64,000 nt of DNA from the IMG/VR virus record IMGVR_UViG_3300008954_003475, positions 157,879 through 221,878 of that record; one strand, given 5' to 3'. Below are positions 6,687 to 58,618 of this stretch, in pieces. Under the pieces are notes generated by a model, which was not told where the DNA came from, did no database searches, and saw only the letters and a program-made list of their open reading frames with translations. The number at the start of each line of letters is the position of its first letter. Position 1 is the stretch's first letter. Both the position numbers and the translations under genes were made by a program.

Positions 6687-7852
6687 ACTTCTCCCATTAT
6701 TATCTTAGCCTCTTTAATCAAAGCTTTTTCGTATTCTTTTTCAATGCCTTGTGAATCAACAAAGGCCTTAAACATCGAAAAATCATCTTTATGATCTAAT
6801 ATAGAATTATCTCTGACAAGCCTTTGCACAATTGTTTCTATACCAATTTTCGAAACATGGAAAGCTCCAAGATTATAAAGAGCTGATTGAATCAACTCCT
6901 TATCCATAGCTGGCAGGACCTTTTCATCAACTGCAAACTTGAACCTAACAATCTTATCTTTTACATCATGTTCTTCCAAAGAGTTATCGATAGCATCATT
7001 TATTTCCGAAAAGTCAACCCCCGATAAGTTGACAGAAGCATCTAGCAAATCTCTTACCGGAATTTTACAAAACTTTGCTTTTTTCTTTGAAATATCATAA
7101 TCAACAAAATACTTATCTACCCCTGCATCTCCAAAGTTAGATCGCTCCATAGAACCTGTATACACACACACGGGCGCTTGCTTGCGCAAAACCCTAAACT
7201 GGTGCAGGTGGCCCATCATAGTAATGTCGCAACCCTTAAAGGCTGATGGGCTTGCCATGACTTCTGTTCCGCCATAATCATTATAGCTTCCTTCATAAAA
7301 GAAGTTGTGACCGACAGATACTATTGGATCATCATTTGAAATTGACCCTATAAGCTCTCTGACCTGTGAATCATATGCTTCGGATTGCTCCTTTGTGTTG
7401 CTTCCCTCGTACATCTTTCTATCTCTATAAGGAAGCAAAATCAAGTTTACCTTTTGATTCTTTGCATTACAAACCTCTACAACCTCTGGCTCAAGCAGCA
7501 TTCTAACGTTTGGATATTCTGCTGCAGATAAGGAAACTATAGAGCTTGTAAAGCTCGTTCCACTCTTCTTATAGTCATGGTTACCCATGATTACAAATGT
7601 TGCTATATTTGCATTCGACAACCGCTTCAACGCCTTGTCCACAATATTCATATGCTCAATGCTCGGATCTCTTTGTTCAAACATATCTCCCGTCTGAACA
7701 AAGACATCAGCTTTTGTTTTAATTGTATGGTCAATTATATAATTAAGAGTTTTCTCATAATCATCAACCCTAGTATTTCCGCCTGCCCCATTCGACCTTC
7801 CAAGGCCAAATACAGCACCGATATGAGTGTCTCCACAAACAACTATTCTCAT
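6683..7852 (-). CDS. sbcD: SbcD/Mre11 (T4 gp47-like) nuclease
   Basis: GDTHIG, GDMFE, GNHD, GHN, GHLH, YTGSMER metallophosphoesterase motifs; adjacent to SbcC. Confidence 0.92.
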   Translation of the reverse strand: MRIVVCGDTHIGAVFGLGRSNGAGGNTRVDDYEKTLNYIIDHTIKTKADVFVQTGDMFEQRDPSIEHMNIVDKALKRLSNANIATFVIMGNHDYKKSGTSFTSSIVSLSAAEYPNVRMLLEPEVVEVCNAKNQKVNLILLPYRDRKMYEGSNTKEQSEAYDSQVRELIGSISNDDPIVSVGHNFFYEGSYNDYGGTEVMASPSAFKGCDITMMGHLHQFRVLRKQAPVCVYTGSMERSNFGDAGVDKYFVDYDISKKKAKFCKIPVRDLLDASVNLSGVDFSEINDAIDNSLEEHDVKDKIVRFKFAVDEKVLPAMDKELIQSALYNLGAFHVSKIGIETIVQRLVRDNSILDHKDDFSMFKAFVDSQGIEKEYEKALIKEAKIIMGEV

Positions 7853-18223: not shown

Positions 18224-18922
18224 CTATTTAGAATTACGGTAAGCGGCCACAGAGATAGGCCATAAATCTGTGGCTATATCCAGACAAGCTTTAGCCACCT
18301 GCTGAATCTCCCACTGTGCCCCTTCATGCGTCCTAAGATCAATAAACTTCAAAAGATTATTAAGATTTGTTGTCCCATAATACTCAGTATACATATTCTG
18401 CGGAAGAACCCCTCTAGCCTGCTCTCTGCAAACGCCAGCTTCAATCAGCCTGTTATATAGCTTAATACTTATATCATTGTGCAGCCTAACAGCCTCCGAC
18501 GCGACCTGCGCTGAATATGTATCTCTCGGATAGCTAACCAACGGATTGATGAGGTCACTCTCAACACTTGCCTGCCTATTTGATTTATGCTGTGTTCTGA
18601 ATTCTTTTGGCTCATAAAATTTAATATTTATATTGGTATACCTTCTGGATATCTCATTAAATGACCAAGTTCTGTGTCTATGATGTTGGCTGCGAATAAA
18701 CAAAGGAACACGAAAACGAAAGGTAACAACATTATGTTCTAAGGTAGAAGTATGTTTGTTCTTAATCAAGTAACCAATAAGCTTCTCGTCCTTAGCGTCA
18801 AGTGTATTCTTTTGTTCTCCAAAAGAAACCCTTGCGCTGTTTACAACAGTAAGGTCGCTACCCATATAATCAACAAGCTCTACCTTGCCAATCCCATCAT
18901 TATACAGATCAATCCTCGCCAC
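18224..18922 (-). CDS. thyX: FAD-dependent thymidylate synthase ThyX
   Basis: VVNSARVSF, HTSTLEH, RSQHHRHRTWSFNEISRRY, REQARGVLP. Confidence 0.95.
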   Translation of the reverse strand: MARIDLYNDGIGKVELVDYMGSDLTVVNSARVSFGEQKNTLDAKDEKLIGYLIKNKHTSTLEHNVVTFRFRVPLFIRSQHHRHRTWSFNEISRRYTNINIKFYEPKEFRTQHKSNRQASVESDLINPLVSYPRDTYSAQVASEAVRLHNDISIKLYNRLIEAGVCREQARGVLPQNMYTEYYGTTNLNNLLKFIDLRTHEGAQWEIQQVAKACLDIATDLWPISVAAYRNSK

Positions 18923-20120
18923 GCTCTCCCCTTCCGGTACAGGTCAAGAACAACTGTCGTTGTTCATCAAACATAATATTTGCAGCCTCCGTAACGTCTT
19001 TCGCCGTTACACTTTCCAGACTCTTCATATAATCCTCTATATCTGGGAGGCCAAAAAGCTTTCGCTTAACCGCCCAATAACAAAGACTATAGCTATCTTC
19101 CATGGCAGAATAAAATGATGATCTCATTTTATTTTTGGCTCGCTGCACTTCTTCTTCCGTTGGTAATTCTATTTTAATCCTAGACAACTCGGTGTCCACA
19201 GTTTCAACTGCTTCCTGAACATTGTCTTGTCTTGTTGATAGCTCTATCAAACTTAATGCTCCATGCTGCCAATCGTTATAAGCCGTAGACACTCCATACA
19301 CTAAGCCGCGCTTCTCCCTGACCTCTGTGAACAGCCTACAGTCCATCCCTCGTCCCATAATGGTCATAAGCACCTGTATAGCCCCCTCATGTTCAGAGGC
19401 TGTGTTTGCCGCTGGCATACCCATCCATACATAAGTATGTTCTATACCATCCTTTGCAAGCTCTAAATATCTGCTTTCATCATAAGTCGTATCTTTAAAA
19501 TTATATGATCTCTTTATTTTTCCATTTGGCTTTCCAAAATATTTTCTAAGCAATTCCTTTGATTGCTTTTTATTTAAATTACTACAAAGAGAAACAACAG
19601 CATCTTTTCTTTGACAGAATTGAGAATGGAATCTTCTTACTTCATCACAAGTAAACTCTTCAATGCTTTCTTGAGTTCCAATAACAGGTATCTGAATATA
19701 ATTATCAAAGAAGTTCTTTGAAAAGTTTTGCCAAATAAACATCATTGGATCATCACCTGATGAAATCTCTTCCTCCTTAACTACTTCTTTTTCCTTTAAA
19801 AACTCTTCCTCTGGAAAGATTGGATTGAAAACCATATCAGAAAGAATTTCTATACAGGGTTCTAGATTTTCATACGGAACGGTTATGTAATATGCAACAG
19901 ATTCATGTGAAGTAAAAGCATTTGAATGACCTCCAAGAAAAGCTATCTCTCTTTGCAGTTGCACACTGTCTCTTTTCGCTGTGCCTTTAAACAAAGAATG
20001 CTCAAGCATATGGGCCATGCCTGAGCTATATCCGCCAATGGGTTCAACTCTTGAACCAGCATTGAAAGCAACCATTATCGTTGCTAATCTACTATGTGTC
20101 TTAGAGGTTACATGAATCAT
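18909..20120 (-). CDS. M16-family (pitrilysin/insulinase) zinc peptidase
   Basis: AHMLEHSLFKGT (HxxEH), NAFTSHE, LFTEVREKRGLVY; start moved to MIHVTS because a terminator lies at 20139-20173. Confidence 0.9.
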   Translation of the reverse strand: MIHVTSKTHSRLATIMVAFNAGSRVEPIGGYSSGMAHMLEHSLFKGTAKRDSVQLQREIAFLGGHSNAFTSHESVAYYITVPYENLEPCIEILSDMVFNPIFPEEEFLKEKEVVKEEEISSGDDPMMFIWQNFSKNFFDNYIQIPVIGTQESIEEFTCDEVRRFHSQFCQRKDAVVSLCSNLNKKQSKELLRKYFGKPNGKIKRSYNFKDTTYDESRYLELAKDGIEHTYVWMGMPAANTASEHEGAIQVLMTIMGRGMDCRLFTEVREKRGLVYGVSTAYNDWQHGALSLIELSTRQDNVQEAVETVDTELSRIKIELPTEEEVQRAKNKMRSSFYSAMEDSYSLCYWAVKRKLFGLPDIEDYMKSLESVTAKDVTEAANIMFDEQRQLFLTCTGRGERGED

Positions 20121-20138
20121 TAACCGCCTCCTTAAGAT

Positions 20139-20173
20139 AAAAAAAGGGTGGAGACATTGTGTCTCCACCCTTT
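20139..20173 (-). terminator. Rho-independent terminator after the VWA gene
   Basis: AAAGGGTGGAGAC-5 nt-GTCTCCACCCTTT perfect stem followed by a T-run on the minus strand. Confidence 0.85.
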
Positions 20174-20176
20174 ATA

Positions 20177-21319
20177 CTACCGATTTTTTTGTTCAATAAC
20201 TACTTTCTTTCCATACGGAAACTCTACATCCTTATCTTGGTCACAGACTGCCCACAAGACTCTTGTTTTAGGTCTATCTGGAAACGGAGCGTAACCATCT
20301 GTAAATACAACCAGACCGTCATACTTCTTTTCGTCTGCTAACTCAATCACAGGATGAAAGCAAGTCCCGCCTCGACCCTTTATATCAATCTTTCTTGCTT
20401 TCTTACCGAAAGGTTCAGGGTCGCCATAGATTTGAGTATCGAACTGAACAAAGTCCACTTTTACATGGTCAATCATTCCATTTAACTCAGTAGCAAAATA
20501 CTCAAGCTGTGTATCAGATACAGAACCTGATGTATCGAAGGCCACTAGCAGCTTGCTAGTATAGTTTCTCTTTGTGCCTGGAGAGGCAATACCATAGCGC
20601 CTATTAGGACGCATACGGGTATGCTTCCGACCCATAAGAATCAACTTATTAATAAACCATCTAACTTCCTTTTTCCAATTAACAATTGGCTTATTAGCGG
20701 CAATAATCTGTGCAGCAAGGTTTCCGGCAATATTGCCCCAGCCCTTCTTCTCCTGCTCTTTAATCGCCTTTTCTGCAATGTTTCTAATCTTTTCTTCTAC
20801 AATATCATCATCGAATTCATCCCACATAGAATGGTCGTCAACAGTATCTCCTTTGCCCTCAATAAGAGTATCGAAGTCTTTGCCTTCGCCTTCACACTCT
20901 TTCTTCAACTTCTCGTAATACCATTCCGAAGATTGATTAGACTCCAAGTTGAACTGATGCGGATACAAAGCACCTTCTGGAAGGCCCTCAATATGACAAT
21001 TGATAGCACAGTCAGCTGCAATATTGTATCCTCGCGGATTATATGCAAAGTGCTTTGCGCGTGTAAGATGATGAAGCAAAATATGCAAAGCCTCATGCTT
21101 CAATACACTACGCAACTCTGTTGGAGACAGAGTGTCAATAAAGTCTGGATTATAATACAAGGCTAAGTCAACCCTGCGAATAACTCCAACCGCCAAAGTC
21201 GGAACCTTCTTTGTTTCCTTTTTATTCAAATGGAGGAAAACCTCTCCATACAAAGGCTGGAATGTTACGAGTTTAGAAATCGCTGATTCTAGCCTATTTT
21301 TCACTTGGGTATTAGCCAT
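20177..21319 (-). CDS. DUF2201-type metallopeptidase-like + VWA domain protein
   Basis: LKHEALHILLHH (HExxH), NIAADCAIN, DDHSMW, FDTSGS MIDAS, GRGGT, VFTDG. Confidence 0.88.
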   Translation of the reverse strand: MANTQVKNRLESAISKLVTFQPLYGEVFLHLNKKETKKVPTLAVGVIRRVDLALYYNPDFIDTLSPTELRSVLKHEALHILLHHLTRAKHFAYNPRGYNIAADCAINCHIEGLPEGALYPHQFNLESNQSSEWYYEKLKKECEGEGKDFDTLIEGKGDTVDDHSMWDEFDDDIVEEKIRNIAEKAIKEQEKKGWGNIAGNLAAQIIAANKPIVNWKKEVRWFINKLILMGRKHTRMRPNRRYGIASPGTKRNYTSKLLVAFDTSGSVSDTQLEYFATELNGMIDHVKVDFVQFDTQIYGDPEPFGKKARKIDIKGRGGTCFHPVIELADEKKYDGLVVFTDGYAPFPDRPKTRVLWAVCDQDKDVEFPYGKKVVIEQKNR

Positions 21320-21385
21320 AATATCCTCCTAAAGACTTGAGACACCTGATTCCCTGTGCCTCCCTGTGGGGATGAAGTTTTGTGC

Positions 21386-22462
21386 TTAAGAAGAAAGGTA
21401 AATCTTCTTCAAGTGCTCACGGAAATCTTCATCATTCTGCCATTCCATAACAATCTTCTTGCTCTTTTGACCGCCAAGAAGTCCGACCCAAGCCTGCGAT
21501 GCAACATCACAAGGAAGCATCATAAAGAATTCTCTCAAATTCTTCCGCTGCTTTTCCTTAGTCTTAGTCAAAGACCGTTCGTTAACCTCTGCAACAACAG
21601 AGCGAGAAAGAGCCGCGACAACCTCAATGTCATTACATGCGGCTTCAACCTTATCCTTCACCTTCTCAAAGCTGTCAAGAATATCGGAAGGACGCAGTTG
21701 AGAGAATTCGTTAGTCAGAAACTTCTGAAACATAACAGCAATCTCTCTGCCTACCCAACCCTTTGTAACCTGAGTTAGCATACCATCATCAGTCCGCGAG
21801 TCAAGCCCCATTCCAATAAGAGTATCACTGAAGGCAACCCAACTTCTACGAGAAGGATAAATCCTTCCTGCTTCGAGGTTTCCAACAGGAGGGTCTAGCA
21901 GGTTTTGATTGCGGTTAATAAACTCTACCACAGCCTCATGCACATCGGTTGCTCTGGCCCATTCCATCCACTCATTAGCAGAAGGGTCAAAGTCAATATG
22001 AAACCACCTATCATGCAAAGCTGGGTCTAGCTCAACAACATCGTAATCATCATCGGAGTTAACCGCAGCTACAACGCGCCAACCATCCGGCAGCCTTTCT
22101 CCGTCCAAACGTCGGTCTAGACAGATTTCGAACACAGCTTGCAGTACATCCTTTGATGCTCGATTCAATTCATCAAAGAACAAGATTCCTTGACTACCCT
22201 GTGCCCGAGGCCACCACTCTTGCTTAAGAAAGCGAGTAATGTTTTCTTTAGCATCGAGATATGGCATACCCTTAATGTCGCCAACCTCACACTGTGAAAG
22301 GCGAACGTCCCAAAAACCACAAGGCTTTCCGCTCGCTTCCTCAATTTCTTCTGCAACCTGACGAACAACAGAGGACTTGCCAACACCATGCTTCGCATGA
22401 AGCATGATAGACTTATCCATCGGCATTGTTTTCAGAATTTCCTTAGTCTGATCAATATTCAT
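21386..22462 (-). CDS. MoxR-like AAA+ ATPase
   Basis: HGVGKS, DVRLSQ, LFFDELNRA, DPALHDRW, PSRRSW; upstream of a VWA partner. Confidence 0.88.
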   Translation of the reverse strand: MNIDQTKEILKTMPMDKSIMLHAKHGVGKSSVVRQVAEEIEEASGKPCGFWDVRLSQCEVGDIKGMPYLDAKENITRFLKQEWWPRAQGSQGILFFDELNRASKDVLQAVFEICLDRRLDGERLPDGWRVVAAVNSDDDYDVVELDPALHDRWFHIDFDPSANEWMEWARATDVHEAVVEFINRNQNLLDPPVGNLEAGRIYPSRRSWVAFSDTLIGMGLDSRTDDGMLTQVTKGWVGREIAVMFQKFLTNEFSQLRPSDILDSFEKVKDKVEAACNDIEVVAALSRSVVAEVNERSLTKTKEKQRKNLREFFMMLPCDVASQAWVGLLGGQKSKKIVMEWQNDEDFREHLKKIYLSS

Positions 22463-22932: not shown

Positions 22933-24033
22933 CTATTTCTTTGTTCCAAAAGCATGTGATTCCTCTAACGCAGAAGGCGTCAATCTTACGAAAAGAGAAT
23001 TCTCTCTTAAACTATTTATACTTAATGCGTTTGCATAAGTCATGGCCGACCTTAGCCCTCCGCAAAACTCTTCTAATATATAGTAAGCCTTGCCTTTCAA
23101 TGGAACATATGTCGAAACACCCTCTGCGCAGGTCCCCGGTCTTAACCCGCCTCTTCTGTCATCTTGAACTTCTTTAGACGCCATTCCTCGATATACTTTC
23201 ATACTCTTTCCTTCTATGACAGCAATCTCTCCCGGTGACTCTAATGTTCCCGCAAAAATCCTACCAGCCATTACCGCATCTGCTCCGGCAGCAATGCTCT
23301 TAACTAAGTCTGCTGGATACCTTATTCCTCCATCTGCAATAATAGATACATTAGAAAGATTAGAGTCTGCCAATTTAGCCTTATAGCAATCCACAACAGA
23401 TGCCAAGGTAGGGATGCCAACGCCAGTCATAATTCTTGTCTTACAAATAGAGCCACCACCGATGCCCACTCTTATCGCATCTGCCCCGGCATTGGCAAGA
23501 AAACGAAAGCCCTCCCCTGTGGCAACATTCCCAACCAACAGTGGCAACTCTCCATTGGTTTCCTGCTTAATCCAATCAATCATATCTCTCATTATAGAAG
23601 AATAACCATTAGCTACGTCTATAGCGATCCAATCTATATCTTTCATAAACAAATTATAAAGAGTTCTAAATCTTTGCTTTTCTTCCTTGCCTATCCCAAT
23701 GGCTATAGCAACCGGAGAATAACCATCATCCGTATTCGTATTGTTATATTCAACTATATGCTTTAGTTCTCCAGCTTGTTCCGAAGGAGACATAAATCTG
23801 TGAACAATGCCCATAGCGCCTCGCCTACCGAGAGACAGGGCCATTTCAGAGCCTGTAACAGTATCCATTGGAGAGGATATTATCGGAACATTCAAAGTGA
23901 ATGGACCTAATTTAGATGCCAAATTCGGATCAAGCCTAGACTTTACTGTTGAGTATCTAGGAACCAACATTACATCATCAAAGGATGGCGGCTCTCCAGA
24001 TTCATTTAAAGATAAGGGTGTCCATGTTTTCAT
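22933..24033 (-). CDS. IMPDH/GMP reductase family protein (no CBS domains; flap resembles GMP reductase)
   Basis: [46 protein letters not shown]...[11 protein letters not shown]. Confidence 0.9.
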
Positions 24034-24653
24034 CGTTGTGCCTCATAATATTCTTGAAATGCATCGGCAAAATCTTCTGTATCAGAAGGCCAATATCTAG
24101 CTATACACATCCTGTCCCACCAGTAATGGGACATTTCATGAGCAAGTAATGCATCATTAATGTCGGAGTTTATATTTGCCACTAATAAAACCGAATTCTT
24201 TTCAATTTCCAACGTAGAATCGTAATACCCCCAAAGAACTGTGCTTTTTATACCAGACTCTACAAAGTAATCCGAAAATCTGCCTCTATCATAAAGCACA
24301 CTTCTATCTACAACAAAGATATGTATATTATAATTCTCTCTACAATCTCTATATGGAATATCTTTTGCTCTAAGAAATTGTTTCAATACAGTCCAAGAGT
24401 CTTTCATAATATACTTTACATGCTGCGGACTATGATGAACATACAAAGATTTATCAACACCTCTATCGGAAGCTTGATAAGACAATGTAAACTCAACACT
24501 CCTATCTGACAACTGTATATCACCACTCTCTTGTTCTACAGTTTGTATGTCAGATAGAAAACTCGGCTTGTATGCATCAGCATAACAAAGGGTTGGAATT
24601 ATTAATGTAGCTAATAAATAACTAGCGCTCTTTAATCTTGAAGTTACGTTCAT
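24030..24653 (-). CDS. Secreted putative zinc metallopeptidase
   Basis: N-terminal signal-like hydrophobic stretch; LLAHEMSHYW (HExxH) and downstream EDFA. Confidence 0.55.
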   Translation of the reverse strand: MNVTSRLKSASYLLATLIIPTLCYADAYKPSFLSDIQTVEQESGDIQLSDRSVEFTLSYQASDRGVDKSLYVHHSPQHVKYIMKDSWTVLKQFLRAKDIPYRDCRENYNIHIFVVDRSVLYDRGRFSDYFVESGIKSTVLWGYYDSTLEIEKNSVLLVANINSDINDALLAHEMSHYWWDRMCIARYWPSDTEDFADAFQEYYEAQR

Positions 24654-24813
24654 TTGAGGTTCCTCTGGATTGACCAAGAACCTCAATCTTCAAGTTCTTG
24701 TTCATCCTAAGCATTTCTACATGCTCTAAGGGAACCCTTCCATGCAAGTAAACAGCCTTGGTATCAAGGTTGGTTACTCTAATCCTTAAGTTAATATATT
24801 TATCTTTATTCAT
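24622..24813 (-). CDS. Small basic hypothetical protein
   Basis: 63-aa ORF tiling between neighbours. Confidence 0.5.
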   Translation of the reverse strand: MNKDKYINLRIRVTNLDTKAVYLHGRVPLEHVEMLRMNKNLKIEVLGQSRGTSNERNFKIKER

Positions 24814-24821
24814 AAAATCAC

Positions 24822-25736
24822 CTATTCACTGCTATCAACCATGCTCTGCAATCTGTTCGCAAGATAATAATGTCCAGAAGCAGAAGGCATCAGCCAAGGA
24901 AGATTGTCCTTAGAGAGACAGTCTAGTAGATTGGACACGACCTCTCTGTCTGTACAATCTACAAACAACATAACCTTCCTTTCCAATGCGTCAACCTCTT
25001 TCTGAACAAAAGCTGCCAAAGCTACAGATTCTCTCTTCGTATCCCGCTCAAGCCTTTTAACTCTGTACTTTTTATCTGAAATTTCTCTAGAGAACTTATT
25101 AGTTATACTCCTTTTGATATTCTTGGGAGAAGACTTTGCAATCTTCTTTAAAAGATTATCTGAAAGAGCACTATTATCAAAAGCACTCTCTAAAATATGA
25201 AGCTTTGTATTGACAGCGCCCTTTTCGCGCTTCACCTTGCTCCATACATAATCATAAAAAGCAGAGTCTGTTGAGCTACACATACCTGCATGATGCCAAA
25301 TCATATACAGTTTGTGCTTATCTTCTTCCAAAGCAAACTTGCACATTTCCGATAAATAGTCAAAGTTTTTATCGACCTGTGGAAGCAGTCTGACTCTAAG
25401 ACGATTATCTTCTTCATCCTCATTAACCTTAATAAGGCTATACATATCTGTAACAAACTTTAAGCAAAAGTCCTGTGTCAAAGACTCAATCCTTGTAGTT
25501 GAATTGCAGACTCTCTCTGCTATGTTTAGCAACTCGTCTCTTGTGTCTGGATAATTCTTCCAAATAAATCCAAACGTAGCGTTTGTAATAATCTTTTCTG
25601 CATCCTTACTTTTCCAGTAGGAATCAATATCGTTAATCGCATTTGGAATAGCATAGTTCATCACCGTTGTGATGAAATCATCATTAACATCAAACTTGCT
25701 ATCAAAGGTTACTTGTTTAAATACTTTATTAGACAT
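24822..25736 (-). CDS. Helical-repeat hypothetical protein (paralog family A)
   Basis: C-terminal FVDCTDREVVSNLLDCLSKDNLPWLM aligns with 39558-40436. Confidence 0.7.
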   Translation of the reverse strand: MSNKVFKQVTFDSKFDVNDDFITTVMNYAIPNAINDIDSYWKSKDAEKIITNATFGFIWKNYPDTRDELLNIAERVCNSTTRIESLTQDFCLKFVTDMYSLIKVNEDEEDNRLRVRLLPQVDKNFDYLSEMCKFALEEDKHKLYMIWHHAGMCSSTDSAFYDYVWSKVKREKGAVNTKLHILESAFDNSALSDNLLKKIAKSSPKNIKRSITNKFSREISDKKYRVKRLERDTKRESVALAAFVQKEVDALERKVMLFVDCTDREVVSNLLDCLSKDNLPWLMPSASGHYYLANRLQSMVDSSE

Positions 25737-25744
25737 ATTGTCTC

Positions 25745-26476
25745 CTATCGTCCAGCGGTGATTCTTCGTTCAAATTGACGAGAAATCCAGTTATTTTTAA
25801 CATTTCTATTTGCAACAAGCATTGGCAAATAATCAAGAGGAATCTTCTCTAACAACAAAGAGAATGGCCCTCGGGCAATTTCTTTTGTGAATCCCTTTAG
25901 CTTGCTGTAATAATAAGGCGCTCTTGCAAGACCTTCGTATCTAATGTCTGCAATCTTATCGTCTAACATTTCATCTAGACACTCAACGGGGCCTAACCTA
26001 TTGTAGTAAATCTTTCTAACCTTCTTACACTTATGCCCCTTCAACTTTCTAAGAGCTTTAATGCTACAAAAGGTTACAGCCATCACCTGACTATCGCCAC
26101 TTCCATTTATTGCAACTTCATCAATAAGTGAAATATCTGTATAAAGACCCTTTTGTATTACCAAGGACTTTGCCAAGTCTACATCAGATTCCTTTAGAAT
26201 CTTATCCCCTATCTCTACATGCATTGGAAGCATGTAGGCTAGAACCTTTTGAGCCATCCAATAACCACGATTCCAACTTCTAGTGCGATCTGAGTCTGCA
26301 AAGACAATCTCAAAAAGATTTGAATCTAAACAAACTTTTTCTAAGTCACTCTTTTTCACAGAAGAGCAAACAGCTTGCATCTTCTCATCCAAATCTGACC
26401 ATGAAGCTGACGCAGAAAGCTCTTCAAGATCATTAGCAAGTTTCTTCAAACTAGGACTCATTTTTGTTTGACTCAT
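25745..26476 (-). CDS. HEAT/LRV-like repeat hypothetical protein (paralog family A)
   Basis: KKVRKIYYNRLGPVECLDEMLDDKIADIRYEGL aligns with 45482-46288. Confidence 0.7.
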   Translation of the reverse strand: MSQTKMSPSLKKLANDLEELSASASWSDLDEKMQAVCSSVKKSDLEKVCLDSNLFEIVFADSDRTRSWNRGYWMAQKVLAYMLPMHVEIGDKILKESDVDLAKSLVIQKGLYTDISLIDEVAINGSGDSQVMAVTFCSIKALRKLKGHKCKKVRKIYYNRLGPVECLDEMLDDKIADIRYEGLARAPYYYSKLKGFTKEIARGPFSLLLEKIPLDYLPMLVANRNVKNNWISRQFERRITAGR

Positions 26477-27308
26477 CAGTCACTCCAGTGTTTAATACAT
26501 TTAAATCAGCTACTCTAAAACCAGATGCATTCTTGTGTCCACCGCCACCAAACTCAGCAGCAATCACAGATACATCATCACCATCTTCTTTCGACCTAAG
26601 CGAAAACCTATAACTCTCTCCATCATAATAATACGCAGCAGCAAAAGGCTCTCCGTCTGCTAACTCTGATGCCATTTCTGATTGAAAAAATGGAGCGTTA
26701 ACAATGGGAACTTCTTTGCCTAAAATATTTGTTCTATAAGAATTTAACAAAAGAGATCTAATCAAGTTTCTCTTGTACTGCAAGATTCCTTCTCCCATAT
26801 TCTTTACGCGTTTCCATCTAATAGATTCTGCTGCATCTAAATAACTATGTAGCATATCCCAATTATCAAATGTTTTCTCGAAAGAATCTACGGCAGACAG
26901 CACTTCTTCTGTAAATGGAAGTTCCCACTTCCACAAGTCTCTATCTTCAACATACTGAATAAGGAGAGGAACATTATCATCTGGAAACAAATAATCCCAA
27001 GCCAAATATGCTCCAGAATGATTCATATCAAAATAACAAAACTCTAAATCTCCCGAATGTTCTTGAGCCGACTTATGATGATCTAACACAACAAGGCTGC
27101 TAGCCTCTTGTTCCATTTCCAGCATTATAGCCCTATCATATGAAAAGTCAACAATAAATACATCACGATCTTTAACGCAAGGTCTTTCCTCGCCATGAGT
27201 AACAGGGATATATTCAGCACTCGCTCCAAACTTTCGCCTAAAAGCCCATGCTGCACCGAATCCATCGGGACAATTAGCATGGTATAAAACCATTATTTTA
27301 TCTGACAT
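26451..27308 (-). CDS. DHH/DHHA1-family phosphoesterase
   Basis: YHANCPDG, VDFS, LDHHKS, EDRDLW, FSLRS, GGGGHKNASGF. Confidence 0.9.
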   Translation of the reverse strand: MSDKIMVLYHANCPDGFGAAWAFRRKFGASAEYIPVTHGEERPCVKDRDVFIVDFSYDRAIMLEMEQEASSLVVLDHHKSAQEHSGDLEFCYFDMNHSGAYLAWDYLFPDDNVPLLIQYVEDRDLWKWELPFTEEVLSAVDSFEKTFDNWDMLHSYLDAAESIRWKRVKNMGEGILQYKRNLIRSLLLNSYRTNILGKEVPIVNAPFFQSEMASELADGEPFAAAYYYDGESYRFSLRSKEDGDDVSVIAAEFGGGGHKNASGFRVADLNVLNTGVTDESNKNES

Positions 27309-28324
27309 TAAATTACCTCTGGTGAATACGAAAACTTAACATACTCTACAAGGGGTGAGTTGTTTCGTATTGTTGTTTCAACAAAGCTTATCATTTCGTC
27401 TAAGCTTAAGAACCTAACCAATCTTCCACCATAACTGAGCTTAAAATGCCCTAATTCATTTATTATATCACACTTACTTATAACAAGGTTTGTTGTCCCT
27501 GTTATGTTAACTGCTCTAATTAGCATATCCAGATTGAGCCAATTAACCTTTCTTCTTCTTCCGGTCGTGACTCCAAACTCTTGACCTAAATCTGTAAGAG
27601 CCTTTAACACAGGATCTTCAAGCAATCTATTTGGGAACCTTGGGTCCTCTCCGCTCTTTGTATCATAGATCTTTGCAACGCCCCAAACCTTATTAATCTT
27701 CTGAGTTGGAAAGCCTATGCTGCAAGCTCCATAAGGCAATGTGATACTTGATGTTACATAAGGATAAAGTCCATTATCAATATCAAGCCAAACACCTTGG
27801 GCTCCTTCACATAACAGATTGCCATTTAATTCTTCATTCCAAACAAAGTCTTTGTCTAAAACATCAACGGCAAGAGTTCCAACCCTTGCTGCTTTATCTG
27901 CATAACAAGGGGCTATGCCTCGACCTGTTGTGCCAAGCTTTGCTGCCAAATGTTCTTTATCAAAAGCTATATGTTCCTCTGTAACAATATGGCAATTTGG
28001 AGCCACCTTTACTAATGACGTATCAAAACCACTTTTTGATAAATAGTCAATCTCTTTATAAAAAGATTCTGGATTCAAAACACATCCTGGGCCTATAAGG
28101 GACTGAACTCCATGAAAAACTCCAGATGGAATCAAGTGAGTTTTGTACTTCTCTCCTTCTACGAATACGGTGTGTCCAGCATTATTTCCACCGCCCCAAC
28201 GGGCAACTATATCATAATAATTAGAACCATCTTCATTCTTTGTAGAAGCTAACTGACTGGTGACTTTTCCTTTAGATTCATCCCCCCAAGCTAGTCCTAC
28301 AACTATATCTGCTATATCAATCAT
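27308..28324 (-). CDS. purA: Adenylosuccinate synthetase (short form)
   Basis: GLAWGDESKGK, GGGNNAGHT, HLIPSG, EGAQG..LDID.G.YPYVTSS, EFGVTTGRRR. Confidence 0.93.
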   Translation of the reverse strand: MIDIADIVVGLAWGDESKGKVTSQLASTKNEDGSNYYDIVARWGGGNNAGHTVFVEGEKYKTHLIPSGVFHGVQSLIGPGCVLNPESFYKEIDYLSKSGFDTSLVKVAPNCHIVTEEHIAFDKEHLAAKLGTTGRGIAPCYADKAARVGTLAVDVLDKDFVWNEELNGNLLCEGAQGVWLDIDNGLYPYVTSSITLPYGACSIGFPTQKINKVWGVAKIYDTKSGEDPRFPNRLLEDPVLKALTDLGQEFGVTTGRRRKVNWLNLDMLIRAVNITGTTNLVISKCDIINELGHFKLSYGGRLVRFLSLDEMISFVETTIRNNSPLVEYVKFSYSPEVI

Positions 28325-28904
28325 CGCTATCCTCTTCGCTTCCATTAAGAATGTTTATAACCTTCTTAATTTTACTGGGACGGCGAAGAAAAGTAATACC
28401 CTCTTTATGAGTAGAAACAGTTGCTGTGAATGTAATCATTTCACCTACATTAAAGCTATGTGCCTTAGATGTTTTGAAATACCACTTCCAACCTCTTTCG
28501 TCAACACAGATGATAGCTGGCATAGGATATTCGGTATTCATCTTTGCTTCTGCAATCTTATAAATACCAAGCGGTCCAAGATCTAATCTTGCTCCAACCT
28601 CAACATCAGGCTCGTCTAACATGGTTGCTTTCACAATTGAGTCAACCCATCTATTGAGAGATCCAATCCACTTCTCAGTTAGTCTATGAGGATTTTCTGT
28701 AACAACAGAAATGCTTGATTTAAGAAACTCATTGTTTGGACTTTCTTGTAGCTTTACAGCAAGAAGGGGAATAACCATAGGGTTTAATTGCTCTAGGTTT
28801 TCTTGACCTACTCTGGCGGTATCAACCCCGCTCTTCTTGCGTCTATTGGTGGCAGACTTTCTGGACTTCTTTTTCTTTCGTCCATCACTAAAGATATTTA
28901 TCAT
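28317..28904 (-). CDS. Hypothetical phage protein with possible C-terminal OB-fold
   Basis: EFLKS...LTEKW helical motif; VGEMITFTATVSTHKEGITFLRRP. Confidence 0.6.
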   Translation of the reverse strand: MINIFSDGRKKKKSRKSATNRRKKSGVDTARVGQENLEQLNPMVIPLLAVKLQESPNNEFLKSSISVVTENPHRLTEKWIGSLNRWVDSIVKATMLDEPDVEVGARLDLGPLGIYKIAEAKMNTEYPMPAIICVDERGWKWYFKTSKAHSFNVGEMITFTATVSTHKEGITFLRRPSKIKKVINILNGSEEDSDD

Positions 28905-28977
28905 AAGAAAACCCCGCACCTATCTGGTACAGGGTATTCGATGAAAAAACTATATTAGTTTATTTTATGTATGTTGC

Positions 28978-40775: not shown

Positions 40776-42380
40776 TTACGAGTTATCGTTAGTGATCGAT
40801 TCATATATTGCAACTTCCGTAGTTAACAACGTGCCACTAGCTGATGCTGCATTTTCCAAAGCTGATCTCACAACTTTTACTGGATCAATAATTCCGCTCT
40901 TTAACATATCATCAACATAACAATCATTAAAGGCATCGTATCCACTAAACATTTTTTTAGAATTGATTATTTTTTCCATATAAGAAAAGTGTTCAATTCC
41001 AGCATTTGTTAAAATCTGAACAAAAGGTGCCCGTATTGATTTCATTATTACATCAACACCAATCAACTCTTCTGTAATAAGAGAGGTATCATTTTTTAAT
41101 TTTTGCAATACAGGAATACAATGCAAAAGAGCCGCACCGCCGCCGGGGACTATACCCTCTTCTACAGCAGCCTTAACAGCGTTTATAGCATCTTCCACTC
41201 GATCCTTCCTTTCTTTTACCTCTGCCTCTGAAATACCACCGACTTTAAACACGGCCACAGAACCAGATAGTGCTGACAACCTTTGCTTTATAGAGGCTAT
41301 CTCATAAGTCTCAAGGCTCTGCTCCAGCTGTACCCTTAGAGTCTTAATGCGTTCATCTATCTCATCTTGAGGACAAACCCCATCTATGATAGTTGTATCG
41401 GCTCTTGTGACAAGCACTCTTCTTGCAGTACCTAAATGCTCAACAGATATATTTCTTAGTGGACAACCTGCTTCATTAGTAAATAAAGTTGTTCCACAAA
41501 CCGTTGCAATATCTGAAAGCATACCTCTTCTTATATCTCCGAACCCTGGCGCTCTTACGGCACAGGAGTGTAATGCTCCACGCGCCTTGTTAAGAACAAG
41601 GGTCTGCAAAGCCTCCCCTTCAGTAGTCTGAGATATAACCAACAGGGGTCTTGCCTGTTCTGAAACTGCTTCTAATATAGGAAGTATATCATATGTATTA
41701 GATATCCTTCCATCATAAACCAAAATTAATGGATTATCAAACTCTACAGTAAGCTTTTCTAGATTTGTAGCAAACGTGGGCGTTATATATCCTTTATCAA
41801 AGGTCATACCTTCCGTATATACTACAGCTGTTTCAAAGCCTGGAGCATCTTCTACAGATATCATTCCATGATCTCCAACAGCCGAAACAGCTTCTCCAAT
41901 AGTTGTGCCAAGACCTACATCATTATTTGAAGATACAATCGCTACATTCCTTATAGTCTCTTCATCATCAACAGACTTGCTAATATCCTTTAACTTTTTA
42001 ACAACTGTATTAACAGCTTTGTCTATCCCTCTTTTGATCAAGACCGGATTGTGACCAGCTGCAACCATTTTAGCCCCCTCTGTAAAAATAGATTGAGCTA
42101 AAACAGTTGCAGTGGTTGTTCCGTCACCTGCCGATGCATTTGTGGACGAAGCTACACTCTTAATGAGTTCTGCCCCCATGCTATGCATCTTATCCTCTAG
42201 AGTTATAGATCTAGCGACTGTAACTCCATCCTTGGTAATGAGTGGTGGGCCAAAGCTTCTTTCTATAGCTGCATGACGCCCCTTCGGTCCAAGCGTTGCC
42301 TTCACAGCATTAGCCAATACATCAAGCCCATCTTTAAGACCATTTCTTGCATCAGCGCTAAACTTAACTTCCTTGCCCAC
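40776..42380 (-). CDS. groEL: GroEL-like chaperonin
   Basis: [53 protein letters not shown]; lacks the GGM tail. Confidence 0.95.
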
Positions 42381-47570: not shown

Positions 47571-48014
47571 TCAAGTGTTCATATCGACTATTTTATATAC
47601 TCTTCCAAATTTAGAAAACTTCTTTCCATTAGAAATAAGTTCTGCCAAACTTAATAAGAAAGCTCCTTCTTCTTCTTTATATCTCTGACTGCTTACTTTT
47701 CTAACACTCTCCAGCTCTTCTGTCTTTTCTTTCCATATCTTTAAGAAATCAGCTGGAGAGTCTCCGGTCAAAGACTTAAAATATTTATCATAATCAGACA
47801 AAGTTGCTGCGCTATTACCCTCTTTTGCAGACCACTCTTTATCTGATTCTAAAACTTTTTTACTTTTAGATATAGAGGATACTACCATAGATTCGTCTGA
47901 CCTCAAAGACTCAGAAAGAACCCATCCAAAAGAAGTTGTATCGCCAACGCTTTCTTCATGATAAGAATAAAGCTTGTTGATCTTATACTTTTTTATAAAA
48001 TCATCCACCTTCAT
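47571..48014 (-). CDS. Hypothetical protein
   Basis: ORF; start set at MKVDD, overlapping the glnII stop. Confidence 0.6.
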   Translation of the reverse strand: MKVDDFIKKYKINKLYSYHEESVGDTTSFGWVLSESLRSDESMVVSSISKSKKVLESDKEWSAKEGNSAATLSDYDKYFKSLTGDSPADFLKIWKEKTEELESVRKVSSQRYKEEEGAFLLSLAELISNGKKFSKFGRVYKIVDMNT

Positions 48015-52052: not shown

Positions 52053-52138
52053 TGGTAGGGACGGTGGGACTCGAACCCACAAGGTCTTTGACCGACAGAT
52101 TTTAAGTCTGTTGCGTATACCAATTCCGCCACATCCCC
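52053..52138 (-). tRNA. tRNA-Leu(UAA), type II with encoded CCA
   Basis: GGGGATGTGGCGGAATTGGTATACGC-ACAGA-CTTAAAA-TCTGT-variable arm-GTGGGTTCGAGTCCCAC-CGTCCCTACCA. Confidence 0.95.
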
Positions 52139-57732: not shown

Positions 57733-58107
57733 TCAGTTAGGCAGACTTCCGCTTATAAGCTTGTTGCAACATGAACATATAAATGGGCTAGCCATAACTG
57801 TTTCGTTATCTGAATAATCAAAGGTTACTTCATCATCGACATTTATCTCTTTGATTGCAATAACTTTGTGACCGTCTATTTTGCAGGAGGGGTTACAACT
57901 GTGGTTTATAAATGCGCCGATTTTGTCTTCAATATGCTTATTTTTTGCAACCTGAATAGATGTACGAGTCGGCCTATGTAATACTTCTCCACTCAAATAC
58001 AGAACCGTATCATTAGCATCAAACTTTCGTTTAACAAAGATACCGCTCTGTCCAGGCTTATTTGCTATTGGGGCTATACAAAGACTGTTTAGGTCTAAGT
58101 CTTTCAT
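57733..58107 (-). CDS. SET-domain protein with post-SET-like cysteines
   Basis: GIFVKR, FINHSCNPSC, DEVTFDY, FICSCC. Confidence 0.85.
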   Translation of the reverse strand: MKDLDLNSLCIAPIANKPGQSGIFVKRKFDANDTVLYLSGEVLHRPTRTSIQVAKNKHIEDKIGAFINHSCNPSCKIDGHKVIAIKEINVDDEVTFDYSDNETVMASPFICSCCNKLISGSLPN

Positions 58108-58108
58108 T

Positions 58109-58618
58109 TTAAGAGTCCTTGTTGTATTGTGTTACTTTTATTCCATAATTTTTAAGAAGAGCAACCCCTTCATCGTCATATTTGTTTATATAAATAATAT
58201 GTTTTATATCTGAATTTATTATAGCCTTTGCACACATAATACAGGGAGATAGTGTGATATACATTTTCTTATCTTTTGGAAAATTAAAATCACATTTAAG
58301 CAAAGCATTTACTTCAGCATGTATAAAACCAGAGCAATCTTTTTCTTGAGAGAACCTCCTGTTTGGACCTCCCTTTTCATCGCCATTATAGCCTATTGCC
58401 AAAACTTGAGTGTTGTCCAGAGTTACAATGACAGCCCCAACTTTATACTTTGTATCACACGATCTTTGTGATATTGACTTTGCAAAGTTAGACCAAATAT
58501 AATCCCAGCTTGGTCTAACATTAGCGGTTGGGCAGTTAGTTGGGCAGCTCTCAGGATTTTTTAGTATCGTCTCTTGACGCCAACCATATTTGTATGAATC
58601 TGTAATTCCATCAGACAT
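58109..58618 (-). CDS. dCMP deaminase
   Basis: KVGAVIV, IGYNG, HAEVNAL, LSPCIMC. Confidence 0.9.
   Translation of the reverse strand: MSDGITDSYKYGWRQETILKNPESCPTNCPTANVRPSWDYIWSNFAKSISQRSCDTKYKVGAVIVTLDNTQVLAIGYNGDEKGGPNRRFSQEKDCSGFIHAEVNALLKCDFNFPKDKKMYITLSPCIMCAKAIINSDIKHIIYINKYDDEGVALLKNYGIKVTQYNKDS

What the first reader, a model, noticed from the sequence alone, without database searches (positions are those of the whole stretch)
22933..28324. Possible GC-to-AT nucleotide-pool converter: GMP-reductase-like enzyme + PurA, with dCMP deaminase + ThyX
Seen: the IMPDH/GMPR protein lacks CBS domains, and its flap [23 protein letters not shown] has no Arg-Tyr dyad. As I recall it, this matches GuaC flap length and GG position (GMSS....GG.....AEG) rather than the longer IMPDH flap. 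purA lies 3 kb away; dCMP deaminase (58109-58618) and thyX (18224-18922) are also present. Established: GMP to IMP to adenylosuccinate to AMP, and dCMP to dUMP to dTMP, convert G to A and C to T. Inference: an AT-rich phage recycling the nucleotides of a more GC-rich host.
Basis: partly seen in the sequence, partly recalled or inferred. Interest (0 to 1): 0.6.

Follow-up and report, generated by a model that had tools for sequence, protein, structure and literature searches.

The report
Phage guanine-to-adenine nucleotide conversion module
A large uncultured marine phage carries a stripped-down GMP-reductase-like enzyme and a minimal adenylosuccinate synthetase that probably turn guanine nucleotides into adenine nucleotides for its AT-rich DNA, and the same pairing recurs in many other uncultured viruses.

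Summary
The IMPDH/GMPR-family protein (22933-24033, minus strand) has no CBS subdomain. Its flap has exactly the length of enterobacterial GuaC and lacks IMPDH's Arg-Tyr dyad. It keeps the Cys/Thr/Glu triad that GMP reductase needs.

It is not a canonical GuaC. It falls below every NCBIfam cut-off and forms its own clade, outside both the GuaB and GuaC clades.

The PurA-like protein is a 338-aa minimal adenylosuccinate synthetase. It keeps all the IMP, aspartate and GTP motifs and is not a PurZ.

The strongest evidence is gene neighbourhood. Of 80 viral loci with this short PurA, 40 carry an IMPDH/GMPR-family gene within 10 kb. These partners belong to four clades, and one of them is bona fide GuaC. 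None has a CBS subdomain or the dyad.

The window's contig lacks purB, guaA and de novo purine genes, and so does a 99%-complete relative. The host must therefore supply PurB.

The host is unknown, so the "GC-richer host" rationale is untested. Salvage of G-rich host RNA through the adjacent DHH phosphoesterase and a class II RNR is an equally good rationale.

It is a new variant of a known kind.

The parts
22933..24033 (-). GMP-reductase-like member of the IMPDH/GMPR superfamily (366 aa, protein P0001). It has no CBS subdomain and belongs to a viral clade of its own.
   Evidence: Pfam PF00478 at 339.5 bits in one stretch. All NCBIfam equivalogs fall below their cut-offs. The family holds more than 110 members at 50-94% identity. 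In the tree it is a clade of its own with support 100/99.
23434..23466 (-). Catalytic loop [11 protein letters not shown], with Cys197 (= GuaC Cys186) and Thr199 (= Thr188).
   Evidence: Both residues are invariant in 113 family members.
23119..23187 (-). Truncated flap [23 protein letters not shown] (residues 283-305). It ends in Glu304 (= GuaC Glu289), has no Arg-Tyr dyad, and carries the family-specific invariant Cys302.
   Evidence: Min et al. 2008 (PMC2525682) state that GMPR lacks the dyad and has a truncated flap.
24030..24686 (-). Small conserved protein with a hydrophobic N-terminus and an invariant HExxH motif. Its stop overlaps the start of the GMPR-like gene. A role in nucleotide metabolism is not evident.
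   Evidence: Alignment A3 of 10 orthologues. No Pfam, PHROG or NCBIfam hit. The atlas search gave nothing useful.
24822..25736 (-). 304-aa helical-repeat (HEAT-like) protein of unknown function.
   Evidence: The atlas structure neighbours are HEAT-repeat proteins at TM about 0.5. Orthologues are found in 4 of 9 relatives.
25745..26476 (-). 243-aa conserved protein, probably helical repeats, of unknown function.
   Evidence: Alignment A2 has orthologues in 9 of 9 relatives. No family hit.
26451..27308 (-). DHH/DHHA1 phosphoesterase (285 aa, NrnA-like size). It carries the DHH and GGGH motifs, and its start overlaps the PurA stop.
   Evidence: phrog_4771 at 283 bits. Pfam DHHA1 at 24.6 bits, just under the 25.9 cut-off. 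The motifs were read. It lies directly downstream of PurA in every clade-A relative examined.
27308..28324 (-). Minimal adenylosuccinate synthetase (338 aa from Met8; an alternative start lies at 28345).
   Evidence: Pfam PF00709 at 271.8 bits. PurA NF002223 scores 267.8 against a cut-off of 402, and PurZ NF038379 scores 93 against 300. Among solved structures the best matches are PurA (203 bits), against 54 bits for PurZ.
28317..28919 (-). Protein of about 195-200 aa and unknown function, lying upstream of PurA and overlapping it.
   Evidence: orthologues in 5 of 9 relatives.
18224..18922 (-). ThyX, the flavin-dependent thymidylate synthase.
   Evidence: TIGR02170 at 172.6 bits against a cut-off of 87.9. 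Pfam Thy1.
58109..58618 (-). dCMP-deaminase-like zinc deaminase (169 aa).
   Evidence: Pfam dCMP_cyt_deam_1 at 71.8 bits. ComEB scores 67.7 bits, below its 219 cut-off. The HAE and PCxxC motifs are present.

Best explanation
The window comes from an uncultured marine jumbo phage. The contig held is 222 kb with 38.5% GC, and complete relatives are about 330-380 kb. The phage encodes a two-enzyme purine interconversion module.

Proposed pathway:
1. The CBS-less IMPDH/GMPR-family enzyme most likely acts as an NAD(P)H-dependent GMP reductase (GMP to IMP plus ammonia). It would work through a Cys197 thioimidate, with Thr199 and Glu304 protonating the leaving ammonia. This step is inferred.
2. The minimal PurA condenses IMP with aspartate, at the cost of GTP, to give adenylosuccinate. 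This is inferred from a complete set of catalytic motifs.
3. The host's PurB then releases AMP. This follows from the absence of a phage purB, which is shown.
4. The phage's class II ribonucleotide reductase can pass the adenine nucleotides on to DNA precursors.

The DHH/DHHA1 phosphoesterase that overlaps the PurA stop plausibly feeds the module with mononucleotides from short oligonucleotides (inferred). A dCMP-deaminase-like enzyme and ThyX can do the matching C-to-T conversion at the deoxynucleotide level.

The net effect is to shift salvaged G and C nucleotides towards the A and T that a 38.5% GC genome needs. Whether the surplus G/C comes from GC-richer host DNA or from host RNA is not settled.
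For: Architecture:
- There is no CBS subdomain, and the flap matches GuaC in length.
- Cys197, Thr199 and Glu304 are invariant in 113 homologues. These are the three residues shown to be needed in E. coli GMPR. GMPR is defined by the missing Arg-Tyr dyad and the truncated flap (PMC2525682). PMC13249884 states that all IMPDHs contain CBS domains.
- The DVANG(Y/H) motif matches GuaC and not GuaB.

Cellular relatives:
- Relatives at 35-41% identity share the GMAS..EVQD..GG...AEGV flap.
- In 5 of 5 genomes examined, this relative is the only PF00478 gene besides a full-length CBS GuaB. It therefore occupies the GuaC slot.

PurA:
- It keeps the equivalents of E. coli D13, N38/H41, T129/R131, R143 and Q224, plus TTGRRR and SKCD. 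PurZ has Ser in place of D13 and VTKKVRR.

Gene neighbourhood:
- The order PurA, DHH and onward to the GMPR-like gene is kept in 10 of 10 relatives first examined, down to 46% identity.
- Among the 80 best viral loci with the short PurA, 40 carry an IMPDH/GMPR-family ORF within 10 kb. These partners fall into four clades.
- One clade is canonical GuaC, scoring 400-530 bits on PRK05096 against a cut-off of 397. In L287 it lies directly upstream of PurA.
- None of the 40 partners has a CBS subdomain or the dyad.
- In the most AT-rich group (25-32% GC) a dCMP deaminase lies in the same cluster in 10 of 11 loci.

Absences:
- No PurB, GuaA or PurM/L was found in the contig or in a 99%-complete relative.

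Other:
- A class II RNR is on the contig.
- Isolated phages with annotated GMP reductases have loci at 39% GC (Cr30) and 49% GC (XacN1). From my own knowledge, their hosts are about 65-67% GC.
Against: - No activity has been measured.
- The protein is below every GMPR equivalog cut-off (PRK05096 scores 213 against 397). It scores higher on the IMPDH model (260 bits).
- In the tree it sits on the GuaB side of the GuaC-versus-rest split (95/95), although outside the GuaB clade.
- The basic residue at -3 from the catalytic Glu, which is R in both GuaC types, is Thr here. Of 19 positions that separate GuaB from GuaC, 7 are GuaB-like, 5 are GuaC-like and 7 are neither.
- The whole block of about 20 kb is collinear across the clade, so conserved order within the clade is not by itself evidence of coupling.
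- Two clade-A relatives (L211, L212) have lost the GMPR-like gene but kept PurA.
- A complete phage of another clade (G007) has a GMPR-like gene but no PurA.
- The four or five genes between the two enzymes have no evident link to nucleotides.
- The host GC content is unknown.
Confidence: 0.62

Rival explanations
1. The enzyme is a primitive or stripped IMP dehydrogenase that hydrolyses the thioimidate through the Thr-Glu relay alone. Together with PurA it would give the phage both branch-point enzymes and boost flux from IMP to both G and A nucleotides.
For: Its best profile and structure matches are bacterial IMPDH catalytic domains. It lies on the GuaB side of the tree. It has the GuaB-like K279/Y281 and the C-terminal ESH motif. 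Min et al. propose an ancestral IMPDH that used only the Thr321-Glu431 pathway.
Against: It lacks both IMPDH-defining additions, the CBS subdomain and the flap with the Arg-Tyr dyad. Loss of Arg418 lowers hydrolysis about 1000-fold. There is no guaA and there are no de novo purine genes to feed or drain such a branch. In other viruses the same short PurA is paired with bona fide GuaC and never with a CBS-bearing IMPDH. Cellular relatives coexist with a normal GuaB.
Confidence: 0.13
2. The two enzymes are not coupled. They are independent auxiliary genes that merely sit in one collinear core block, each tuning the host pool on its own.
For: The whole 20-kb block is syntenic across the clade. 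Four to five unrelated genes separate the two. Each gene occurs without the other in some viruses.
Against: Half of 80 viral loci with the short PurA have a GMPR-family gene within 10 kb, in four different arrangements and clades. By contrast, only 77 of 50,697 phage records hold any relative of the GMPR-like protein. In any case the product of one enzyme is the substrate of the other.
Confidence: 0.1
3. The module serves counter-defence or pool rescue rather than base re-balancing. It would rebuild adenine nucleotides when the host or a defence system depletes ATP or dATP or deaminates adenine nucleotides to inosine nucleotides.
For: PurA converts IMP back to adenine nucleotides. The module is widespread in large phages, which carry many anti-defence genes. 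This is inference only.
Against: No defence-related neighbour was found. The co-clustering with dCMP deaminase and ThyX in AT-rich viruses fits composition balancing better.
Confidence: 0.06
4. The pair acts on a modified purine. One model is ToyE/TubD plus PurA/PurB in toyocamycin and tubercidin synthesis, which turn a 7-deazaguanine nucleotide into a 7-deazaadenine nucleotide. The other is a PurZ-like route to 2-aminoadenine. Either would give modified phage DNA.
For: TubD is a CBS-less NADPH-dependent GMP-reductase homologue working with PurA and PurB on a deazapurine (PMC6112128). The phage clade has a family-specific invariant Cys302 and lacks GuaC's Arg at -3, so its substrate pocket differs.
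Against: No QueC or GTP cyclohydrolase I was found in the contig or in two complete relatives. PurA keeps Asp13 and the GTP motif, whereas PurZ has Ser. The PurZ model scores 93 bits against a cut-off of 300.
Confidence: 0.04

Closest known systems
GuaC GMP reductase (type 1 in E. coli and human; type 2 in Bacillus and Listeria)
   Same: No CBS subdomain. The flap has the same length as type 1 and lacks the Arg-Tyr dyad. The Cys/Thr/Glu triad, the DVANG motif and the ribose-binding Asp are present. The predicted role is the first step of G-to-A interconversion.
   Different: Only about 33% identity. It falls below all equivalog cut-offs and sits in a separate clade across a 95/95 split. It has Thr in place of Arg at -3 from the catalytic Glu, an invariant GTCAEG Cys, and a GuaB-like C-terminal ESH segment.
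Bacterial IMP dehydrogenase GuaB
   Same: It gives the highest overall sequence and fold similarity of the catalytic barrel (about 37-40% identity, TM about 0.8). The catalytic Cys loop and the C-terminal ESH motif are shared.
   Different: The phage protein has no CBS/Bateman subdomain. Its flap is about 10 residues shorter and has no DRY(F)Q dyad. It lies outside the GuaB clade (100/100).
Uncharacterised cellular CBS-less clade (Desulfobacterales, Bacteriovoracaceae, Chromatiaceae and others; PDB 3r2g from Legionella, deposited as IMPDH)
   Same: Same length class. The flap YRGMAS.EVQD..GG.....AEGV is very similar. It is the only IMPDH/GMPR-family gene besides a normal GuaB in the five genomes checked.
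   Different: 35-41% identity and a separate clade. It has DVAHAH instead of DVANGH, and K-T-A-E-G instead of T-C-A-E-G. Its function is also untested.
Adenylosuccinate synthetase PurA (bacterial, and the short archaeal form such as Pyrococcus, PDB 2d7u/5k7x)
   Same: All catalytic and substrate motifs are present. Its size is like that of the short archaeal form.
   Different: It lacks about 48 residues of the middle helical region and about 50 near the C-terminus, compared with E. coli PurA. It is below the PurA equivalog cut-offs and forms a large viral family.
PurZ of 2-aminoadenine (Z-genome) phages such as phiVC8
   Same: A phage-encoded short member of the PurA family that relies on the host's PurB.
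   Different: PurZ has Ser in place of the catalytic Asp, altered Asp/GTP motifs and uses dGMP. The window's protein keeps the PurA residues and scores only 54 bits against PurZ structures.
ToyE/TubD with PurA and PurB in deazapurine antibiotic synthesis
   Same: A CBS-less GMP-reductase homologue followed by PurA and PurB chemistry converts a G-type nucleotide into an A-type nucleotide.
   Different: That pathway acts on 7-deazapurines and is encoded together with preQ0-pathway genes, which are absent here.

Membership tests
IMP dehydrogenase (GuaB) | CBS/Bateman subdomain inserted in the barrel | tested here: not met
   The Pfam IMPDH match is a single continuous stretch and there is no CBS hit. 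Alignment shows the whole insert is absent.
IMP dehydrogenase (GuaB) | Mobile flap carrying the Arg-Tyr catalytic dyad (DRY[F/G]Q) | tested here: not met
   The flap is 10 residues shorter than in enterobacterial GuaB, with R293-R294 and no Tyr. No Tyr occurs at that position in the family.
IMP dehydrogenase (GuaB) | Curated equivalog score and clade membership | tested here: not met
   TIGR01302 scores 260 bits against a cut-off of 481.5. The protein lies outside the GuaB clade, which has 100/100 support.
GMP reductase (GuaC) | Catalytic Cys186, Thr188 and Glu289 | tested here: met
   C197, T199 and E304 are invariant in 113 homologues. Their requirement in E. coli GMPR is shown in PMC2525682.
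GMP reductase (GuaC) | Truncated flap without the Arg-Tyr dyad, and no CBS (bacterial and animal type) | tested here: met
   The 23-residue flap aligns to Salmonella GuaC without a gap.
GMP reductase (GuaC) | Curated equivalog score and clade membership | tested here: not met
   PRK05096 scores 213 against 397, TIGR01305 scores 196 against 492, and PRK05458 scores 190 against 344. A 95/95 branch separates it from both GuaC types.
GMP reductase (GuaC) | Conserved basic residue at -3 from the catalytic Glu (Arg286 in E. coli and human numbering). Its role in GMP binding is recalled from memory, not checked here. | tested here: not met
   Thr301 in 99% of the family. It is R in both GuaC types and K in the cellular short clade.
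GMP reductase (GuaC) | NADPH-dependent reductive deamination of GMP | not testable with these tools
   This needs an enzyme assay or a complementation test.
Adenylosuccinate synthetase (PurA) | Catalytic Asp13 and His41, the GDEGKGK P-loop, IMP contacts (T129, R143, Q224), the aspartate-binding TTGRRR, and the guanine-specific (N/T/S)KxD | tested here: met
   GDESKGK, NAGHT, TTGRG, KAAR, EGAQG, TTGRRR and SKCD all align to Salmonella PurA.
Adenylosuccinate synthetase (PurA) | Curated equivalog score and full-length architecture | tested here: not met
   NF002223 scores 267.8 against 402. About 48 plus about 50 residues are missing.
PurZ (succino-amino-deoxyadenylate synthase) | Ser in place of the catalytic Asp, altered Asp/GTP motifs, and the equivalog score | tested here: not met
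   The Asp is kept. phiVC8 and PermaG PurZ have GS.. and VT(K/Q)KVRR. NF038379 scores 93 against 300.
PurZ (succino-amino-deoxyadenylate synthase) | Companion DatZ and MazZ genes | not tested
   These were not searched for.
ThyX | Equivalog score | tested here: met
   TIGR02170 scores 172.6 against 87.9.
dCMP deaminase | CDA-fold zinc site (HAE ... PCxxC) and the family profile | tested here: met
   PF00383 scores 71.8 against 25. The motifs are present. The ComEB equivalog is not reached (67.7 against 219), and substrate specificity is untested.
DHH/DHHA1 phosphoesterase (NrnA-like) | The DHH motif, the GGGH motif of DHHA1, and the family profile | tested here: inconclusive
   DHH and GGGGH were read in the sequence and phrog_4771 scores 283 bits. 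However, Pfam DHHA1 scores 24.6 against 25.9 and NrnA scores 21 against 350.

The most novel reading that the evidence does not exclude
The viral clade, and perhaps its cellular sister clade including PDB 3r2g, may be a distinct and unrecognised third kind of enzyme in the IMPDH/GMPR family. It would be a lineage that never gained IMPDH's CBS subdomain and hydrolytic flap. Its pocket is altered (invariant GTCAEG, no Arg at -3), which could give it a substrate or cofactor preference different from GuaC, for example a deoxy or modified guanine nucleotide, or NADH. Together with the minimal PurA it would form a dedicated viral purine-conversion pathway, and its product might be something other than ordinary AMP.
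Probability: 0.12. Interest if true: 0.8.

Novelty: new variant of a known kind. Interest (0 to 1): 0.58.

Why it matters
- It would show that large uncultured marine viruses carry a recurrent, modular way to re-balance purines (G to A). It sits alongside the better-known pyrimidine route through dCMP deaminase and thymidylate synthase, and it links viral genome composition to encoded metabolism.
- It identifies an uncharacterised clade of the IMPDH/GMPR superfamily, with cellular relatives that databases (and one PDB entry) label IMPDH. This clade bears on how the IMPDH hydrolytic flap and the CBS domain were acquired.
- It gives a simple rule for annotating hundreds of viral genes now called "IMP dehydrogenase".

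Tried and rejected
- DNA similarity to known phages found no match. TerL reaches at most 26% identity to isolated phages, so no host can be inferred from relatives.
- The sequencing-run search returned only marine and seawater metagenomes and no host label.
- Whole-record searches of the ENA contigs were not possible.
- The AF2 model (pLDDT 85) searched with Foldseek against the PDB gave engineered CBS-deleted IMPDHs as top hits (TM about 0.8). This cannot separate IMPDH from GMPR.
- Specificity-position counting gave a mixed result of 7, 5 and 7.
- Atlas searches of two intervening ORFs gave no function.
- The 2.5 kb at 54-62% GC at one end of the relative G006, which IMG/VR calls a provirus, gave no Pfam hit that would name a host.
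- The PurZ / Z-genome reading was rejected on residues and scores.
- The 7-deazapurine reading was rejected for lack of QueC and FolE.
- Literature searches found no paper describing a viral GMP reductase plus PurA module. One paper mentions a GMP reductase in deep-ecotype pelagimyophages.
- Read laying, complex prediction and the large representative search were not used.

Full report
**Context.** The window is the last 64 kb of a 221,878-bp linear IMG/VR viral contig with 38.5% GC, estimated 66% complete. Nearly all genes lie on the minus strand (87 of 91 ORFs of at least 250 aa). The contig encodes a large terminase, a DnaE-type polymerase, a class II ribonucleotide reductase and GroEL. The same phage occurs in marine and seawater metagenomes of at least 14 studies and on a 277-kb contig. 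Relatives reach 328-379 kb. TerL is at most 26% identical to that of any isolated phage, so the host is unknown.

**Observation.** The 366-aa ORF at 22933-24033(-) matches Pfam IMPDH/GMPR at E 2.6e-101 in one uninterrupted stretch, with no CBS domain. It aligns without a gap to the 23-residue flap of Salmonella GuaC. GuaB of Klebsiella, Acinetobacter, Listeria, Staphylococcus and Desulfosarcina has a longer flap with DRY(F/Y)Q. PurA, ThyX and the dCMP-deaminase-like gene are confirmed.

**What the IMPDH/GMPR-family protein is.**
- It belongs to a large metagenomic family of about 360 aa at 50-94% identity, often on contigs of 200-380 kb.
- In 113 members, Cys197, Thr199 and Glu304 are invariant. 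These correspond to E. coli GMPR Cys186, Thr188 and Glu289, which are needed for GMPR activity in vivo (PMC2525682).
- That paper also states that GMPR lacks the Arg418-Tyr419 dyad and has a truncated flap, because hydrolysis of the thioimidate must be avoided.
- A recent paper states that all IMPDHs contain CBS domains (PMC13249884). On architecture the protein is therefore a GMP reductase and not an IMP dehydrogenase.
- It is still not a GuaC. All NCBIfam equivalogs fall below their cut-offs, and the IMPDH model scores highest (260 bits against 213 for GMPR).
- Solved structures rank bacterial IMPDH first.
- A maximum-likelihood tree places the family as its own clade (100/99). It lies on the GuaB side of a 95/95 split from both GuaC types, but outside the GuaB clade (100/100).
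- Positions that discriminate GuaB from GuaC are mixed.
- The Arg found at -3 from the catalytic Glu in both GuaC types is Thr here. The motif GTCAEG, with an invariant Cys, is specific to this family.
- HMMER can align DDRRGG with Thermotoga's ADRYGQ, but the Tyr position is R or K throughout the family.

**Cellular relatives.**
- A scan of species genomes found homologues at 35-41% identity. They have the same length and a very similar flap (YRGMASSEVQDDYHGGMAEWKTAEGV). They occur in Desulfobacterales, Bacteriovoracaceae, Chromatiaceae and other groups.
- PDB 3r2g from Legionella, deposited as IMPDH, has the same flap type.
- In five of five such genomes there are exactly two PF00478 genes: a full-length CBS GuaB and this short protein. 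None has a canonical GuaC.
- These proteins also miss all NCBIfam cut-offs. This pattern fits a GMP-reductase role for the short clade but does not prove it.

**PurA-like protein.**
- Starting at Met8 (28324), as in its orthologues, it is 338 aa long.
- It keeps the P-loop with the catalytic Asp (GDESKGK), NAGHT, TTGRG, the Arg143 equivalent, EGAQG, TTGRRR and the guanine-specific SKCD.
- It lacks about 48 residues of the middle region and about 50 near the C-terminus of E. coli-type PurA.
- PurZ of phiVC8 and of a Microbacterium phage has Ser in place of the Asp, and VT(K/Q)KVRR.
- The PurZ model scores 93 bits against a cut-off of 300. PurZ structures score 54 bits, against 203 for PurA.
- It is therefore a minimal adenylosuccinate synthetase and not a 2-aminoadenine enzyme.

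**Linkage within the clade.** The gene order is PurA, DHH phosphoesterase, three to four unknown genes, the GMPR-like gene, MoxR ATPase, DUF2201, M16 peptidase and ThyX. This order is kept in all ten relatives first examined, down to 46% identity. Because the whole block is collinear, this alone is weak evidence of coupling.

**Linkage across other viruses.** The decisive result came from the reverse search.
- Of the 80 best viral-contig loci with the short PurA (out of at least 571), 40 carry an IMPDH/GMPR-family ORF within the fetched 10-kb flanks.
- These partners fall into four sequence types:
  - Type A is the window's type (8 loci).
  - Type B (12 loci) lies about 1 kb downstream of PurA.
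  - Type C (11 loci) is found in contigs of 25-32% GC. In 10 of these 11 loci a dCMP-deaminase gene lies in the same cluster.
  - Type D (9 loci) has the flap of enterobacterial and human GMPR.
- Four type D representatives pass the GMP-reductase equivalog cut-off (400-530 bits against 397). In L287 the reductase lies 46 bases upstream of PurA.
- All four types lack a CBS subdomain and the dyad, and all keep the Cys, Thr and Glu.
- For comparison, only 77 of 50,697 phage records contain any relative of P0001.
- Different GMPR-architecture clades, one of them bona fide GuaC, have thus been recruited repeatedly next to the same viral PurA. This is the best available evidence that the window's enzyme does GuaC's job.

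**Rest of the pathway.**
- No PurB (PF00206), GuaA (PF00958) or PurM/L (PF02769) is found in the contig or in a 99%-complete 332-kb relative. No PRTase passes its cut-off.
- The phage thus encodes interconversion and not de novo synthesis, and it must use the host's adenylosuccinate lyase, as PurZ phages do.
- The invariant Asp234 (the ribose-hydroxyl ligand in this family) and the canonical PurA motifs suggest ribonucleotide substrates. The class II RNR can then make the deoxy forms.
- The DHH/DHHA1 gene overlaps the PurA stop and is always adjacent to it in clade A. It could supply mononucleotides from short oligonucleotides.

**Rationale.**
- Weak hints point towards a GC-richer host. The only tRNA on the contig reads UUA, the phage's commonest Leu codon at 30%. 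A relative's tRNAs mostly read A-ending codons. Isolated phages with annotated GMP reductases (Cr30, XacN1) have much lower GC than their GC-rich hosts (for the phage loci; the host values are from my own knowledge).
- Host RNA is an alternative source that does not need a GC-rich host. It is G-rich whatever the genome composition (established knowledge). This fits the ribonucleotide-level enzymes, the DHH enzyme and the RNR.

**Rivals.**
- A stripped IMPDH remains possible.
- Uncoupled neighbours are unlikely given the recurrence across viral clades.
- Counter-defence by rebuilding adenine nucleotides has no specific support.
- Modified-purine pathways are disfavoured. TubD/ToyE with PurA and PurB are a real precedent for G-type to A-type conversion of 7-deazapurines (PMC6112128). 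But QueC and GTP cyclohydrolase I are absent from the contig and from two complete relatives.

**Novelty.** The G-to-A route through GuaC, PurA and PurB is textbook, and GMP reductase and PurA-like genes have been annotated in individual phages. Five full-text searches found no description of a recurrent viral GMP-reductase plus PurA module, nor of this CBS-less clade. I rate it a new variant of a known kind, of moderate interest.

Noticed in passing
window 48001-49083 (-): A 360-aa glutamine-synthetase-like gene (Gln-synt_N plus Gln-synt_C). Both GMP reductase and dCMP deaminase release ammonia, so a link is conceivable but untested.
   Followed up: no
window 40776-42380 (-): A phage-encoded GroEL chaperonin (phrog_5725, 525 bits). 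A Cpn60 is also present in the 379-kb groundwater relative.
   Followed up: no
window 57733-58107 (-): A 124-aa SET-domain protein lies directly downstream of the dCMP-deaminase-like gene.
   Followed up: no
window 24030-24686 (-): A small protein family with a signal-like hydrophobic N-terminus and an invariant HExxH...E motif (a putative small metallopeptidase). It appears translationally coupled to the GMPR-like gene and is conserved in all clade-A relatives.
   Followed up: partly
window 18909-22462 (-): A conserved trio of a MoxR-type AAA_5 ATPase, a DUF2201 (VWA-like) protein and an M16 peptidase lies between the GMPR-like gene and ThyX. These are the best-conserved genes of the block, at up to 89% identity across relatives.
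   Followed up: no
window 52053-52138 (-): A tRNA-Leu(UAA) is the only tRNA on the 222-kb contig. UUA is the phage's commonest Leu codon at 30%.
   Followed up: partly
whole contig G000 (window = 157879-221878): Gene orientation is almost entirely one-stranded (87 of 91 long ORFs), with GC skew of about -0.2 throughout. The contig also holds giant ORFs of 3319, 2738, 1970 and 1777 aa at G000 46-98 kb.
   Followed up: no
L205 1-2500 (relative G006, 332 kb): The first 2.5 kb have 54-62% GC against about 40% in the rest, with a sharp boundary. IMG/VR classes the record as a provirus. The ORFs there gave no informative Pfam hit. It could be host DNA, a chimera or a mobile element.
   Followed up: partly
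L211, L212 (clade-A relatives): These loci keep PurA, DHH, the unknown genes and the MoxR block, but lack the GMPR-like gene. This is a clean loss within the conserved block.
   Followed up: no
L248, L259, L261, L276, L281, L284 and type-C loci (L251-L286): The short PurA-like gene also occurs on extremely AT-rich contigs (19-32% GC), several of them named GVMAG (giant-virus bins). A dCMP deaminase is often adjacent. The family may therefore extend beyond phages to viruses of eukaryotes.
   Followed up: partly
L107-L111 (cellular genomes G001-G005); PDB 3r2g: A cellular CBS-less clade with a short flap is the only partner of GuaB in these genomes, is below all NCBIfam cut-offs, and is probably an unrecognised GMP reductase family. 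The Legionella structure 3r2g, deposited as IMPDH, has the same flap type.
   Followed up: partly
window 59011-59883 (-): A 290-aa protein gives weak di-iron oxygenase hits (AurF and phenol hydroxylase families, below their cut-offs). It lies two genes upstream of the deaminase.
   Followed up: no
window 4581-7852 (-): An SbcC-like (701 aa) and SbcD/Mre11-like (389 aa, Metallophos) nuclease pair.
   Followed up: no
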